NCBI RefSeq assembly: GCF_023055435.1
Contig: NW_025963780.1
Coordinates: forward strand, 5,270,001 to 5,334,000
Origin: Haliotis rufescens
Taxonomy: Eukaryota
Reading direction: 5' to 3'
Length of the DNA: 64,000 nucleotides
Under the pieces are notes generated by a model. The model searched no databases. It saw only the letters and a list, made by a program, of their open reading frames with translations, and had not been told where the DNA came from. The position numbers were made by a program, and so were the translations under genes. The first letter of the stretch is position 1, and the number at the start of each line of letters is the position of its first letter. Of this stretch, positions 20,276 to 58,079 are shown one piece after another.

Positions 20276-23073
20276 CTAATCGCCGCTACCATCAGCCTCA
20301 CCACTTGTATTGTTCAGGCATTCGCTGCTTTCATTGTCAAGTGTCGTACAATCTGAAGGCACATCGGTTGCCAACTCTTTTGAACCTTCATATGAATCCG
20401 TTGTGTCGTCTCCTGCAGCCGCTGAATCCGCTGTGTAGTCTGCTGCAGTCGCTGAAACCGTTGTGTCGTCTGTTGCAGTTGCTGAATCCGTTGTGTCGTC
20501 TAAAGCAGTCGCTGAAACCGTTGTGTCGTCTGTTGCAGTTGCTGAATCCGCTGTGTCGTCTGCTGCTGTCGCTGAAACCGTTGTGTCGTCTGTTGCAGTT
20601 GCTGAATCCGTTGTGTCGTCTCCCGCAGTCGCTAAATCCGTTGTGTCGTCTGCTGCAGTCGCTGAAACCGTTGTGTCGTCTGCTGCAGTCGCTGAAACCG
20701 TTGTGTCGTCTGTTTCAGTCGCCGAATCCGTTGTGTCGTCTGAAGCAGTCGCTGAAACCGTTGTGTCGTCTCCTGCAGTCGCTGAATCCGTTGTGTCGTC
20801 TGCTGTAGTCGCTGAATCCGTTGTCTCGTCTGCTGTAGTCGCTGAATCCGTTGTGTCGTCTGATGCAGTCGCTGAATCCGTTGTGTCGTCTGCTGCAGTT
20901 GCTGAATCCGTTGTGTCGTCTGCTGCAGTCGCTGAAAACGTTGTGTCGTCTGCTGTAGTCGCTGAATCCGTTGTCTCGTCTGCTGTAATCGCTGAATCCG
21001 TTGTGTCGTCTGATGCAGTCGCTGAATCCGTTGTGTCGTCTGCTGCAGTTGCTGAATCCGTTGTGTCGTCTGCTGCAGTCGCTGAAAACGTTGTGTCGTC
21101 TGCTGCAGTCGCTAAATCCGTTGTGTCGTCTGCTTCAGTCGCTGAAACCGTTGTGTAGTCTGCTGCAGTTGCTGAATCCGTTGTGTCGTCTGCTGTAGTC
21201 GCCGAATCCGTTGTGTCGTGTGAAGCAGTCGCTGAAACCGTTGTGTCGTCTCCTGCAGTCGCTGAATCCGTTGTGTCGTCTGCTGCAGTCGCTGAAACCG
21301 TTGTGTCGTCTGCTGCAGTCGCTGAAACCGTTGTGTCGTCTGTTTCAGTCGCCGAATCCGTTGTGTCGTCTGAAGCAGTCGCTGAAACCGTTGTGTCGTC
21401 TCCTGCAGTCGCTGAATCCGTTGTGTCGTCTGCTGTAGTCGCTGAATCCGTTGTCTCGTCTGCTGTAGTCGCTGAATCCGTTGTGTCGTCTGATGCAGTC
21501 GCTGAATCCGTTGTGTCGTCTGCTGCAGTTGCTGAATCCGTTGTGTCGTCTGCTGCAGTCGCTGAAAACGTTGTGTCGTCTGCTGTAGTCGCTGAATCCG
21601 TTGTCTCGTCTGCTGTAATCGCTGAATCCGTTGTGTCGTCTGATGCAGTCGCTGAATCCGTTGTGTCGTCTGCTGCAGTTGCTGAATCCGTTGTGTCGTC
21701 TGCTGCAGTCGCTGAAAACGTTGTGTCGTCTGCTGCAGTCGCTAAATCCGTTGTGTCGTCTGCTTCAGTCGCTGAAACCGTTGTGTAGTCTGCTGCAGTT
21801 GCTGAATCCGTTGTGTCGTCTGCTGTAGTCGCCGAATCCGTTGTGTCGTGTGAAGCAGTCGCTGAAACCGTTGTGTCGTCTCCTGCAGTCGCTGAATCCG
21901 TTGTGTCGTCTGGTGTAGTCGCTGAATCCGTTGTGTCGTCTGCTGTAGTCGCTGAATCCGTTGTGTCGTCTGCTGTAGTCGCTGAATCCGTTGTGTCGTC
22001 TGCTGCAGTTGCTGAATCCGTTGTGTCGTCTGCTGCAGTCGCTGAAAACGTTGTGTCGTCTCCTGCAGTCGCTAAATCCGTTGTGTCGTCTGCTTCAGTC
22101 GCTGAAACTGTAGTGTCGTCTGCCGCAGTTGCTGAATCCGTTGTGTCGTCTGCTGTGGTCGCCGAATCCGTTGTGTCGTGTGAAGCAGTCGCCGAAACCG
22201 TTGTTTCGTCTGCTGTAGTCGCTGAATCCGTTGTGTCGTCTGCTGTAGTCACTGAATCCGTTGTGTCGTTTGCTGCAGTCGCTGAAATCGTTGTGTCGTC
22301 TGCTGCAGTTGCTGAATCCGTTGTGTCGTCTGCTGCAGTCGCTGAATCCGTTGTGTTGTCTGCTGCAGTCGCTGAAACCGTTATGTCGTCTGCAGCAGTC
22401 GCTGAATCGGTTGTGTCGTCTGCTGTAGTCGTTGAATATGTTGTGTCTTCTGCTGTAGTCGCTGAATCCATTGTGTCGTCTGCTTTAGTCGCTATATCCG
22501 TTGTGTTGTCTGATGCAGTCGCTGAATCTGTTGTGTCGTCTGCTGCAGTCGCTGAAACCGTTGTGTCATCTGCTGCAGTTGCTGAATCCGATGTGACGTC
22601 TGCTGTAGTCGCTGAATCCGTTGTGTCGTCTGCTGTAGTCGCTGAATCCGTTGTGTCGTCTGCTGTAGTGGCTGAATCCGTTGTTTCGTCTGCTATAGTC
22701 GCTGAATCCGTTGTGTCGTCTGCTGCAGTCGCTGAATCCGTAGTGTCGTCTACTGCAGTCGCTGAAACCGTTGTGTCGTCTGCTGCAGTTGCTGAATCCG
22801 TTGTGTCATCTGCTGCAGTCGCTGAATCCGTTGTGTCGTCTGCTGCAGTCGTTGAATCCGTTGTGTCGTCTGCTACCGTCGATGATTGGGTGGTATCGTC
22901 TTCTACCGTTGATGATTGGGTTGTATCGTCTGCTAACGTTGAGGGTTTGATTGTGTCGTCTGCTACCGTTGATGGTTGGGATGTGTCGTATGCAACCGAC
23001 GATGATTGGGTTGTATCGTCGCTTGACGCTGTTGAAGTTGTATAATCAGCAGCTGTTGAAAATTCTGCCTGAC
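20276..23073 (-). CDS. Gene 1 exon 2: 931-aa acidic Asp/Thr/Ala decapeptide-repeat region with C-terminal Cys pair (full protein about 1032-1038 aa)
   Basis: Acceptor atttatttattcacag|GT at 23074/23073 completes the phase-1 codon (G+GT=Gly) in frame with the 960-aa ORF; about 88 30-bp units with no indel or stop in this frame; unique C-terminus CTTLDNESSECLNNTSGEADGSGD*. Confidence 0.85.
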
Positions 23074-24329
23074 CTGTGAATAAATAAATGATGTCATAGT
23101 CATTGTTAACAATATGATCAAAATATATACATACACCACAGTCTTTTAACAACTTCATTTTATCTCTGAAACATCAAATAATCAATCGAGCCTTACATTT
23201 TCTGAAAAAAGAAACATAAAACTTTCTATTTGCTGCTCAGAATCAGCCATTTCCCACTCAAAACCGCCAATGTGTGATTTTCCACCAAAATGTGAATATG
23301 AATAAATTTAATGAGACTGTCCAACACATTGTCAGTGGATGCCCAGCTTTGGCACAAACACAATGTCTTAAGCGACATGATGGAGTGGCTCGATCCTAGT
23401 ATTATCGTCTTCGCCATGCTTGTGATTTTGACACAGAGGTCTATCCATTGTACGACCCAGAATATGTTGAGAGCGTTATGGAAAATGATAAATACAAAAA
23501 ACTGTACATACTACTACTACTACCTACTTTGCCAGAGGGGGCGATCGGGTAGTCTTGTGGTTAAAGTGTTCGCTCGTCACGCCGAAGACCCGGGTTCGAT
23601 TCCCAATATAGGTACAATGCGTGAAGCCCATTTCTGGTGTCCCCCGCCGTGATATTGTTGGAATATTGCTTAAAGCGGCATAAAACCATACTCACTCACT
23701 TGAGTGTGTAATATTTTCCAGCTGTACCAAAGCCGCCTGTAAATAACCTGTCTGGACCAGACCACACACCCCTTTCAAGCGAAATAGATCGCTAGATACC
23801 TCTCGAAGTGGAGGAAAGAAGCTGCGTGTATAAAAAAAACTACCAGAGAGACATTTTGTAGAAGATGTATTGCACGTTTTGATAATCGATACTTTGTATG
23901 ACCAATTTAGGGAAAATCTGTTTGGACAAGTCCATTTTATGAACAGGTGGGTTTGGTTATTTCCCGCATATTGTCACAGTCCTCACGTCGATCATCTGTA
24001 CCGTTCTCGTAAAACCGATTGTTCCCCCGCTTTTGGAATCATGCTCTTTTTGTAGGTTCATGAAGTGAGTGAGCGAGCTGTGTCCGACGCCACTTTTAAC
24101 AACATTCCAGTTACATCACGGCATGTCAGCTTAATGTGTGAGGAACGCCCGAAGTGATGCAGGTCTCAGACGTTTACCACTTCTGTAACCCACGAGCACG
24201 GGTATGGTGCTGACAAACCTGGAAACATAATCGGGGCGAACCGGGATTCGAACTCACAAACATAGGTTTCAGGCATGTCCAAGGAACGCAGCTCTGCACT
24301 GTGAATCGCGGCGCCAAATACGTCTTGCG

Positions 24330-25200
24330 AGACAGAAAGGGATATCACGGTTTGTATGATACGGTTAACATGATCCAAAATTCAAATATTGGTGCATATC
24401 AGTATCTTTATAAAAAAAATCAGTTTGTTAAAATCCAGACCAGATATTAAATTGATTTTTACATAAAGAAAAGTTGAATTGGATTCACTTTTTCCCCGTA
24501 GTGAAAATAAGTAGGTAAGCTGATTTTCACGGGTTTTTAATATGATAAAACAGTCGTCTAAAACTCTTTTCCATGAATGTTCAATTTGTTCTGTCATAGA
24601 TTCCCGAAGAGTATCTCTTACCTTATCATAAAACATATGCTCTAAAAATCTCAAAACAAGGGTTACCTTTGTCATTGGCTACTCCAATCTTTGTCAATAA
24701 TGAAATCAATCAAAATAAAACATGTTATTGGTAATTAAATTTAATTAAATTAAATTAAATCTGATAGCTTCCATTCCGAGCTCAGTTTCAGTATAACTGT
24801 ACAAACTAACAACATCCACACTAACTAGCATCGATCCTTCCGGTACCTCAGTACGTAATTTACTGGAAAAAATCAATGTCACTCTGAGAAAACTGGTTTA
24901 CATGTTTACATAAGGGCTTAAGAATGACATCTGTGACATTGCTGAGACATTGAGTTACAGCTATGGGGTCGTCCAACTGGAAATAACTTCACAATGTTCA
25001 TCATTAATTTACTTTTGAATTAATTTATTTGGTATGTACTTTGGGTTGGTCATGAGAATTAGCGGTCTTTGATTCCTTTTCTTTGTCTAAACTTTCATCA
25101 TCATTCTTATCTAACAACTTTACCTTATTCTGGACATATGTTTTATTCTTTTTTTTAACTAAAAATGATGTGATATTGATCATAATTTAAAATGGACATT
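24330..25200 (-). mobile_element. Decayed Penelope-like element reverse transcriptase fragment
   Basis: LVSVDVVSLYS..ELGMEAI (about 24765-24830) and WKRVLDDCFII (about 24540-24575) resemble PLE RT motifs; frameshifted and deleted. Confidence 0.65.
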
Positions 25201-25215
25201 ATCTTCTCTGATTGC

Positions 25216-57490: not shown

Positions 57491-57758
57491 TTGAACGTTA
57501 TAGGAACAATATAGTTATTTTAATATTAAATACCGAATATTCACTGTTACAACAATAATAAAACACAATTGCTGTGTTTTATTGAACGTTATAAGAACAA
57601 AATAAATATTATAATATTAAATACCGAATATTCACTGTTACAACAATAATAAAACACAATTGCTGTGTTTTATTGAACGTTATAAGAACAATATAATTAT
57701 TATAATATTAAATACCGAATATTCTCTGTATTAACAATAATAAAACAGAATTGCTGTG
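57491..57758. repeat. 91-bp tandem repeat x3 at the 5' end of the gene 3 intron
   Basis: Units start at 57491, 57582, 57673. Confidence 0.92.
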
Positions 57759-57772
57759 ATTAAGATACGTAC

Positions 57773-58079
57773 GTGCTAAGGAATATCCTTTTGATCCAGA
57801 CACGTTGACAAGTGTAAGCTGAAAAAGATCTTCGTTGTACAGTGAACACAATCCCTCACCTTTAGTGTAAAAAAAACTCTTACATGCATTAATTTCCAAA
57901 CCACAAAGCGTACCACACTCACATAGAGTAACCACCCGCTTGTTCATAATGATACAGTCTATTCCTTGTTTGTCATCGAAATGAGACATGTGTTCAAAGT
58001 TACTCAACATTACGCTTGAATCGGACACCGATACTTGAAGAACAAGAAGGATAAACACTCGAACAGTTGCGACAGTCAT
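57773..58079 (-). CDS. Gene 3 exon 1: signal peptide + PAN/apple-like domain
   Basis: MTVATVRVFILLVLQVSVS signal-like; CECGTLCGLEINACKSFFYTKGEGLCSLY; ends GSKGYSLA + C|GTACGT donor, phase 1. Confidence 0.87.

What the first reader, a model, noticed from the sequence alone, without database searches (positions are those of the whole stretch)
20276..58079. Tandem family of three secreted PAN/apple-head + variable Thr-rich-tail genes with identical exon architecture
Seen: three minus-strand exons share signal peptide, F-x5-[FY]-x2-K-x-G, C-x3-C-x6-C-x11-C, [DE]L-x2-L and G[AS]K[GA]Y-x3, and all end in a phase-1 GT donor at the same codon. Each can be joined in frame to a downstream phase-1 acceptor opening a Thr-rich terminal exon (931, 74 and 49 aa; introns 6.1 kb, 10.0 kb, 0.8 kb). 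Known: PAN/apple modules mediate protein or glycan binding, and in molluscs they often precede C-type lectin or fibrinogen domains. Inference: here a lone PAN head sits on a tail whose length varies about 19-fold with no transmembrane segment. This suggests a modular secreted-matrix system (shell, mucus, egg coat or adhesive) that I do not recognise as a named family.
Basis: partly seen in the sequence, partly recalled or inferred. Interest (0 to 1): 0.85.

Follow-up and report, generated by a model that had tools for sequence, protein, structure and literature searches.

The report
Abalone PAN-head, acidic mucin-tail gene cluster
The window holds three real two-exon genes, part of a local cluster of five, that each encode a small secreted protein with a PAN/apple binding domain and a very variable, acidic, threonine-rich tail; the family is uncharacterised and abalone-restricted, and it is built from familiar parts.

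Summary
Three minus-strand exons (29204-29522, 49536-49830, 57773-58079) each encode a hydrophobic leader plus a four-cysteine PAN_1 domain, scoring above Pfam's cutoff. All three end in a phase-1 GT donor at the same codon. Each has a downstream in-frame phase-1 AG acceptor that opens a Thr/Ser/Ala-rich, acidic terminal exon with no transmembrane segment (931, 74 and 49 aa).

For gene 3 the proposed junction 57773/56961 is present in a contig of a public run (kind guessed as RNA). All four runs laid cover only the exons. Haliotis rubra RefSeq XP_046564793.1 ("threonine-rich protein-like", 236 aa) has the same architecture. Its head models confidently as a PAN fold; the best structural matches are the plasminogen and HGF N-terminal domains.

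The joins of genes 1 and 2 remain inferred. The family is larger than reported: two more members lie 10-24 kb beyond the window. Four of the five genes, and the H. rubra protein, end in a cysteine pair set in acidic sequence.

No paper or proteome links the family to a tissue. Function is therefore inferred: secreted, probably O-glycosylated, polyanionic matrix or mucus glycoproteins anchored by a lectin-like head. I rate it a new member of a known kind, of moderate interest. Two other first-reader notes of this scan report PAN plus mucin-stalk proteins elsewhere in this genome.

The parts
29204..29522 (-). Gene 1, exon 1: start codon (29522, or the better-context ATG at 29504), hydrophobic leader, PAN domain, phase-1 donor CAG|GTGGGT after 29204
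   Evidence: ORF; PAN_1 27.9 bits, E 2.1e-6; donor read; start contexts
23074..29203 (-). Gene 1 intron (6130 bp), inferred
   Evidence: Phase-1 donor and acceptor are compatible. No RNA data.
20276..23073 (-). Gene 1 terminal exon: 931-aa polyanionic tail (T 31%, D 24%, A 22%, S 12%; net charge -238). It ends in a C-x9-C pair within acidic sequence; stop at 20276-20278.
   Evidence: This is the only frame open across the whole array.
20393..22934 (-). 30-bp tandem array, about 85 copies, consensus unit AADDTTDSAT, with a 630-bp higher-order duplication; lies inside the gene 1 tail
   Evidence: TRF; unit analysis; array essentially unique to this locus in the genome
49536..49830 (-). Gene 2, exon 1: leader plus PAN domain, phase-1 donor AAC|GTACGT after 49536
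   Evidence: (27.3 bits)
39565..49535 (-). Gene 2 intron (9971 bp), inferred; holds a 41-bp x 41 tandem array and transposon-like inverted copies
39338..39564 (-). Gene 2 terminal exon: 74-aa Thr/Ser/Gly-rich tail with no cysteine pair; stop at 39338-39340; AATAAA 25 nt after the stop
57773..58131 (-). Gene 3, exon 1: at least 52 nt of 5' UTR, ATG at 58079, leader plus PAN domain, phase-1 donor CAC|GTACGT after 57773
   Evidence: (22.9 bits). Contigs of runs X1, X2 and X4 cover 57820-58131 and stop at the exon.
56962..57772 (-). Gene 3 intron (811 bp), removed in a contig of run X3; contains a 91-bp x 3 repeat
   Evidence: Joint 56960/57772 with cut +1, ends CT..AC; TRF
56500..56961 (-). Gene 3 terminal exon: 49-aa Thr/Ala/Pro-rich tail ending in a C-x7-C pair within acidic sequence; stop at 56810-56812; 3' UTR of at least 310 nt
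   Evidence: contigs covering 56500-56630 and 56665-56960

Best explanation
The window holds three members (genes 1-3) of a five-gene, same-strand tandem cluster. It is most likely from an abalone (Haliotis); that is inferred from the only annotated relative.

Each gene has two coding exons. Exon 1 encodes a cleavable-looking hydrophobic leader and one minimal PAN domain with four conserved cysteines, presumably forming two disulfides. A phase-1 intron follows at a fixed codon. Exon 2 encodes a disordered, acidic, Thr/Ser/Ala(/Pro)-rich tail of 49 to 931 residues. Four of the five genes end in a short cysteine pair set in Asp/Glu-rich sequence.

Shown:
- The PAN identity and fold.
- The shared exon phase.
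- Splicing and apparent transcription of gene 3.
- A spliced gene model with the same architecture in H. rubra.

Inferred:
- The joins of genes 1 and 2.
- The products are secreted and densely O-glycosylated on the tails.
- They work as extracellular matrix or mucus glycoproteins. The PAN head would dock onto a glycan or protein ligand. The polyanionic tail would supply hydration, charge or cation binding. The terminal cysteine pair would close a loop or cross-link chains.
- Tail diversity arises from slippage and unequal crossing-over in coding minisatellites, with the phase-1 boundary allowing tails to be exchanged.
For: - Pfam PAN_1 is above cutoff for all three heads.
- A profile of the heads finds PAN proteins and solved PAN/apple structures, namely MIC4 and the HGF N domain.
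- In the AF2 model of the H. rubra protein, residues 31-110 have pLDDT 88-96 and the tail is below 50. Foldseek's best matches are the plasminogen PAN domain (rmsd 2.0 over 77 columns) and the HGF N domain.
- Donors and acceptors are all phase 1.
- A contig of run X3 joins 56961 to 57773, and coverage in four runs is confined to the exons.
- XP_046564793.1 is 70% identical to gene 3 in the mature head. It has an Arg at the junction codon, a Thr-rich tail and the same kind of cysteine-pair, acidic C-terminus.
- Two further members sit at C2:5344386-5349266 and C2:5355097-5357958.
- In a genome-wide profile search the four profile members score E 2e-38 to 7e-35 and the fifth gene E 2.7e-7; several PAN exons on contig C46 score as well as or better than the fifth gene.
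- All tails are acidic (pI about 4) and none has a hydrophobic segment.
- The gene 1 repeat is unique to this locus. Its reading frame has no stop, where about four would be expected if the observed mismatches fell at random (rough estimate, p about 0.02).
- AATAAA lies 25 nt after the gene 2 stop.
Against: - There is no RNA evidence for the gene 1 or gene 2 junctions.
- No relative was found for the gene 1 tail or for a spliced gene 2.
- The run with the spliced contig is only guessed to be RNA, and depth is low (about 3).
- The gene 2 tail lacks the terminal cysteine pair.
- Repeat units in gene 1 show a synonymous to non-synonymous ratio of 47:118, the same as random expectation (24:64). 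The repeat sequence itself is therefore barely constrained.
- The gene 1 tail has almost no proline (0.4%), unlike classical mucin repeats.
- Tissue, glycosylation, ligand and location are all unknown.
- No signal-peptide predictor was available.
Confidence: 0.68

Rival explanations
1. Only gene 3 is as described. The heads of genes 1 and/or 2 splice to other exons, or the 2.8-kb (AADDTTDSAT)n array is a non-coding minisatellite that happens to stay open in one frame. In that case the 19-fold range of tail length would be an artefact of joining.
For: No RNA or homologue evidence supports these two joins. The repeat units show no excess of synonymous change. The + strand of the array also has long open frames of up to 410 aa. 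Other scan notes report PAN plus mucin stalks followed by EGF/fibrinogen or PLAT domains elsewhere in this genome.
Against: - The open frame runs past the array on both sides, from a good phase-1 acceptor to a non-repetitive C-terminus with the family's cysteine pair in acidic sequence.
- No other PAN head lies between head and tail.
- The array is unique to this locus.
- The gene 2 donor heptamer is identical to the donor of gene 3, which is seen to be used, and its tail is followed by AATAAA.
- No lectin-like ORF of 90 aa or more lies downstream of gene 1 in the window.
Confidence: 0.15
2. The architecture is as described, but the proteins are soluble humoral recognition lectins (immune or symbiont-facing) rather than structural matrix or mucus components. 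The tail would act only as a spacer or solubiliser.
For: PAN/apple domains of MIC4 and SML-2 are galactose-binding lectins and are among the structural matches. Many mollusc PAN domains are fused to C-type lectin or fibrinogen domains. The family diverges fast: the heads are 25-46% identical to each other and 70% to H. rubra, and six of nine differences in related contigs change the amino acid.
Against: A 931-residue polyanionic tail is hard to explain as a spacer. There is no oligomerisation domain typical of humoral lectins, and no expression data of either kind.
Confidence: 0.12
3. They are shell-matrix proteins. [quoted passage not shown]
For: The H. rubra member is auto-named 'threonine-rich protein-like'. 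A protein of that name is a minor Lottia shell-matrix component (PMC4094399). The gene 1 tail is 24% Asp with net charge -238.
Against: The two abalone shell proteome papers I read mention no PAN or apple domain and no Thr-rich protein (PMC2989941 and PMC6003135). The name probably reflects composition only, and I could not test whether the Lottia protein has a PAN domain. The other tails are much less Asp-rich.
Confidence: 0.15

Closest known systems
XP_046564793.1 'threonine-rich protein-like', Haliotis rubra (RefSeq automatic model, uncharacterised)
   Same: It has a leader, one four-cysteine PAN domain, an Arg at the junction codon, a Thr-rich disordered tail and a cysteine pair in an acidic C-terminus. 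It is 70% identical to gene 3 in the mature head.
   Different: Its tail is 127 aa against 49 aa, with an expanded Thr-rich repeat. It is only 30-41% identical to the other four heads. Nothing is known of its function.
PAN/apple domains of plasminogen, HGF N domain, Toxoplasma MIC4 and Sarcocystis SML-2 (Pfam PF00024)
   Same: They share the fold and the four core cysteines (helix C-x3-C paired with two strand cysteines).
   Different: Those proteins combine PAN with kringles and a protease domain, or with several PAN copies. Here a single PAN is followed only by low-complexity sequence. Sequence identity is 13-22%.
C. elegans LET-653 (PAN domains, mucin-like linker, ZP domain), a luminal apical matrix protein (PMC4970718)
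   Same: It is a secreted PAN head or heads joined to a Ser/Thr-rich, presumably O-glycosylated region, and it acts in an extracellular matrix. The Atlas structure search also lists LET-653-type clusters.
   Different: LET-653 carries a ZP polymerisation domain and two PAN domains. This family has neither.
Yeast Wsc1 cell-wall sensor (PAN-like WSC head on a Ser/Thr-rich O-mannosylated stalk; PMC9024836)
   Same: It has a cysteine-stabilised PAN-like head displayed on a long glycosylated Ser/Thr stalk.
   Different: Wsc1 is membrane-anchored and signals. Here there is no transmembrane segment. The two are unrelated by descent as far as tested.
[quoted passage not shown]
   Same: It shares the Thr-rich composition and is probably the source of the RefSeq name.
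   Different: Whether it has a PAN head could not be tested here. The link is by name only.

Membership tests
PAN domain (Pfam PF00024 PAN_1) | Profile score above the curated gathering cutoff (21.4 bits) | tested here: met
   27.9, 27.3 and 22.9 bits for genes 1, 2 and 3
PAN domain (Pfam PF00024 PAN_1) | Four core cysteines in the pattern C-x3-C ... C-x-[SA]-F ... C-x-L | tested here: met
   The four cysteines are invariant across five genes and ten relatives
PAN domain (Pfam PF00024 PAN_1) | PAN fold (helix packed on a curved antiparallel sheet) | tested here: met
   The AF2 model of the H. rubra member has pLDDT 88-96 over residues 31-110. Foldseek best matches are plasminogen PAN (rmsd 2.0 over 77 columns) and the HGF N domain. 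The window's own spliced proteins were not folded.
Apple domain in the strict sense (factor XI / prekallikrein type) | Six cysteines, including a disulfide linking the N- and C-terminal ends of the domain | tested here: not met
   Only four cysteines are conserved. The extra ones in genes 2 and 3 are not shared. The six-cysteine definition is from general knowledge.
Mucin-like (PTS-type) secreted glycoprotein | Long Thr/Ser-rich, often tandemly repeated, disordered region | tested here: met
   Thr+Ser is 18-45% in the tails. Gene 1 has 84 ten-residue repeats. The H. rubra tail has pLDDT below 50.
Mucin-like (PTS-type) secreted glycoprotein | Proline-rich repeats and dense O-glycosylation | tested here: inconclusive
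   Pro is 12-14% in gene 3 and the H. rubra protein but 0.4% in gene 1. Glycosylation cannot be tested with these tools.
Gel-forming mucins | VWD/C8/TIL assemblies and a C-terminal cystine knot | tested here: not met
   No domain other than PAN was seen in the heads or in the full-length H. rubra member. The tails end in only two cysteines. The tails were not scanned against Pfam.
Mollusc shell-matrix proteins (e.g. Lottia TRP/LUSP-15) | Detected in a shell proteome or expressed in mantle | not testable with these tools
   No mention in the abalone shell proteome papers read. Tissue of the runs is coded.

The most novel reading that the evidence does not exclude
The family could be an abalone-specific 'one head, interchangeable tail' system. 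In it, a minimal PAN lectin head targets a common matrix ligand, and a phase-1 intron lets hypervariable polyanionic tails be swapped and resized. These range from 49 aa up to a 931-aa, 24% Asp / 31% Thr brush. That would tune the charge, hydration or mineral interaction of shell, mucus or adhesive layers. The gene 1 product would then be a new type of acidic matrix protein.
Probability: 0.15. Interest if true: 0.6.

Novelty: new member of a known kind. Interest (0 to 1): 0.35.

Why it matters
The cluster is a clean, compact example of how molluscs build lineage-restricted secreted proteins: a shuffled phase-1 domain exon joined to a fast-evolving low-complexity exon. It offers testable candidates for abalone mucus, adhesive or shell matrix components, in particular the very long polyanionic product of gene 1. 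On present evidence it extends a familiar theme (PAN head plus mucin-like region) and does not reveal a new principle.

Tried and rejected
Homologue and literature searches that gave nothing useful:
- Word-indexed protein searches with the gene 3 and gene 2 heads found only unspliced ORFs from Logan DNA contigs (P0001, P0003).
- A search with the gene 1 tail gave one marginal hit.
- The Atlas search gave only generic PAN clusters.
- Literature searches found nothing on this family. Terms tried were Haliotis with PAN or apple domain, 'threonine-rich protein' with abalone, the RefSeq accession, and abalone mucus proteome.

Tests on the gene models:
- A scan for a further cysteine-pair terminal exon downstream of the gene 2 tail (29600-39360) found none.
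- The codon-position and synonymous/non-synonymous test on the gene 1 repeat units was uninformative.
- The (GDTYGVRY)n open frame at 53360-54085 was considered as an alternative tail. I rejected it because the AG sites I read by eye from the ORF translation (no tool check) are phase 0 or 2, not phase 1.

Steps not available or deliberately left out:
- Reads could be laid only once, and I used that call on gene 3.
- Joined (spliced) protein models were deliberately not built or searched. Exons were searched separately by reference.
- The run of N near 11.1-11.3 kb was left alone.
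Full report
**What is there.** The ORF list shows three minus-strand ORFs at 29175-29522, 49456-49830 and 57708-58079. Each begins with a hydrophobic N-terminal segment (10-residue hydropathy maxima of 2.7-3.9 within the first 25 residues). 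No signal-peptide predictor was available, so secretion is inferred. Pfam PAN_1 matches all three above its gathering score: 27.9, 27.3 and 22.9 bits against 21.4.

**Splice sites.**
- The DNA shows GT donors directly after the shared ...Y-x3 codon plus one base: CAG|GTGGGT, AAC|GTACGT and CAC|GTACGT. All are phase 1.
- Downstream there are AG acceptors behind pyrimidine tracts, at 23073, 39564 and 56961. Each opens the Thr-rich frame in phase 1.
- The junction codons read Gly, His and Arg.

**Direct evidence for gene 3.**
- I laid the contigs of four small public runs on 56500-59200. The run kind is only guessed as RNA, and the organisms are coded.
- One contig of run X3 joins 56961 to 57773. 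It skips 811 bases whose ends are GT..AG on the minus strand, with 46 and 130 letters on the two sides. This is exactly the proposed junction.
- Contigs of X1, X2 and X4 cover only the head exon (57820-58131, which includes at least 52 nt of 5' UTR). Contigs of X3 and X1 cover only the tail exon and 3' UTR (56500-56960).
- The intron is uncovered apart from a short repeat piece.
- Caveats: depth is low (about 3) and the RNA label is a guess. An exon-only, spliced pattern is nevertheless what a transcript gives.

**Independent gene model.**
- I built a profile of four mature heads and searched it against 1.84 billion representative proteins. It found one protein that carries both the head and a tail: P0006, 236 aa. 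This is NCBI XP_046564793.1, 'threonine-rich protein-like [Haliotis rubra]'.
- Its mature head is 70% identical to gene 3 and 30-41% identical to the others.
- It has Arg at the junction position, then a 127-aa Thr/Pro/Ala-rich tail. That tail ends in a cysteine pair within an Asp run, and it aligns with the gene 3 C-terminus.
- The other close hits (P0001, P0003-P0005) are unspliced ORFs called on short Logan DNA contigs. They say nothing about splicing.
- More distant hits are ordinary mollusc PAN proteins fused to C-type lectin or fibrinogen domains.

**Fold.**
- The AF2 model of P0006, made with a 14-row alignment, has pLDDT 88-96 for residues 31-110 and below 50 for the tail.
- Foldseek against the PDB returns the plasminogen PAN domain (rmsd 2.0 over 77 columns), the HGF N domain, SML-2, MIC4 and factor XI apple domains.
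- A sequence profile search of the PDB agrees.
- Only four cysteines are conserved. This is therefore the PAN core, not the six-cysteine apple form (a definition taken from general knowledge).

**The family is larger than reported.**
- A search of the window's own genome (1.33 Gb; the window is C2:5270001-5334000), together with a local HMM scan, found two more members just beyond the window on the same strand.
- One head lies at C2:5357641-5357958 with donor C|GTGAGT. A phase-1 acceptor 2 kb downstream opens a 176-aa Ser/Thr/Pro/Glu-rich tail with a C-x4-C pair and an (EQETEEPET)n end.
- A more divergent head lies at C2:5348934-5349266 with donor C|GTAAGT. A phase-1 acceptor 4.4 kb downstream opens a 53-aa Thr-rich tail ending in a cysteine pair.
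- Genome-wide, the four profile members score E 2e-38 to 7e-35 and the fifth gene scores E 2.7e-7. Three PAN exons on contig C46 score better than the fifth gene (E 3.3e-8 to 1.7e-7), and others score close to it.
- A second, more distant group of leader-plus-PAN exons on the same chromosome (4.78, 5.06 and 5.15 Mb) also ends in a phase-1 donor. In two of its three members it is followed by phase-1 poly-Thr exons.
- Two first-reader notes of this scan report PAN plus mucin stalks fused to EGF/fibrinogen or PLAT domains elsewhere in the genome (I did not check them).
- The leader-plus-PAN exon therefore looks like a widely reused phase-1 cassette. This cluster would be its minimal form, with no C-terminal globular domain.

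**Tails.**
- All tails are acidic (pI about 4; net charge from -5 to -238). None has a hydrophobic stretch; the maximum 19-residue hydropathy is 0.15-0.92.
- The gene 1 tail is 31% Thr, 24% Asp, 22% Ala and 12% Ser, with 0.4% Pro. It is built from 84 copies of a 30-bp unit (AADDTTDSAT) with a 630-bp higher-order duplication.
- The array is essentially unique to this locus.
- Variation between units shows no excess of synonymous change: 47:118 observed against 24:64 possible. The repeat sequence is thus barely constrained.
- The coding frame nevertheless has no stop, where about four would be expected by my rough estimate.
- That frame also runs beyond the array at both ends, from the acceptor to a non-repetitive C-terminus.
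Gene 2 does not, and no further exon of that kind lies downstream. Its stop is followed by AATAAA after 25 nt.

**What remains inferred.** The joins of genes 1 and 2 rest on several lines of indirect evidence:
- phase compatibility and site quality;
- a gene 2 donor heptamer identical to the one seen in use in gene 3;
- the absence of any other head between head and tail;
- family-typical tail features.

Word-indexed searches found no relative for the gene 1 tail or for a spliced gene 2. Exons were searched separately by reference.

**How it most likely works (inference).** The products are secreted. The PAN head binds a glycan or protein partner, as PAN/apple domains do in MIC4, SML-2 (galactose) and HGF (heparin). 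The tail is densely O-glycosylated and strongly anionic, and forms an extended hydrated brush. The terminal cysteine pair either closes a small loop or links chains. A structural role in mucus, adhesive or shell matrix is my preferred reading. A soluble recognition lectin or a shell-matrix role in the strict sense are the live alternatives.

Divergence is fast. The heads are 25-46% identical to each other. Six of nine differences in the related contigs change the amino acid. The tail is 49 aa here against 127 aa in H. rubra.

**Literature.** I found no paper on this family. The two abalone shell proteome papers I read mention no PAN domain and no Thr-rich protein (PMC2989941 and PMC6003135). 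[quoted passage not shown] Whether it carries a PAN head is untested.

Functional analogues by architecture are C. elegans LET-653 (PMC4970718) and yeast Wsc1 (PMC9024836). Both have further parts that are absent here: a ZP domain in the first and a membrane anchor in the second.

**Verdict.** One junction has direct support. The interpretation as a secreted modular family is reasonable, but its function is untested. I file it as an uncharacterised, lineage-restricted member of the known kind 'secreted PAN-domain protein with a mucin-like region'. Interest is moderate.

Noticed in passing
window 52923-53943 (open frame 53360-54085, minus strand): A 24/48-bp tandem array lies between genes 2 and 3. 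On the minus strand it gives a 241-aa Gly/Tyr-rich open frame, (GDTYGVRY)n. The upstream AG sites I read by eye from the ORF translation are phase 0 or 2, so it does not fit the family's phase-1 donors. Whether it is coding is unknown.
   Followed up: partly
G000:C2:5344386-5349266 and C2:5355097-5357958 (loci L003, L009, L010): Two further family members lie 10-24 kb beyond the window's end on the same strand. Each has a PAN head exon with a phase-1 donor and an acidic Thr/Ser-rich tail exon bearing a cysteine pair.
   Followed up: yes
G000:C2 at about 4.78, 5.06 and 5.15 Mb (L005-L007, L011-L013): A second, more distant group of leader-plus-PAN exons has donor G|GTAAGA in phase 1. In two of its three members (L005/L011 and L006/L013) it is followed by phase 1-1 exons and very long poly-Thr exons. 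The same cassette logic is therefore used outside the cluster.
   Followed up: partly
window 40487-42181: A 41-bp unit is repeated about 41 times (92% matches) inside the proposed gene 2 intron.
   Followed up: no
window 42965-43262 and 45814-46044: Nearly identical 76-aa ORFs lie on opposite strands inside the gene 2 intron. They appear to be inverted copies of a dispersed element. Related pieces occur at 34415-34695.
   Followed up: no
window 58775-59200: Contigs of all four runs pile up here at depths in the hundreds to thousands, with many different loose ends and joints. This is the signature of a high-copy dispersed repeat upstream of gene 3, not of a gene.
   Followed up: no
window 59303-59912: A 48-bp tandem array of 12.7 copies lies upstream of gene 3, with open frames on the minus strand.
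   Followed up: no
window 57489-57758: A 91-bp unit is repeated three times (93% matches) inside the gene 3 intron, starting just after the donor.
   Followed up: no
window about 11100-11300: A run of N (assembly gap or mask) shows as X in the 11024-11380 ORF.
   Followed up: no
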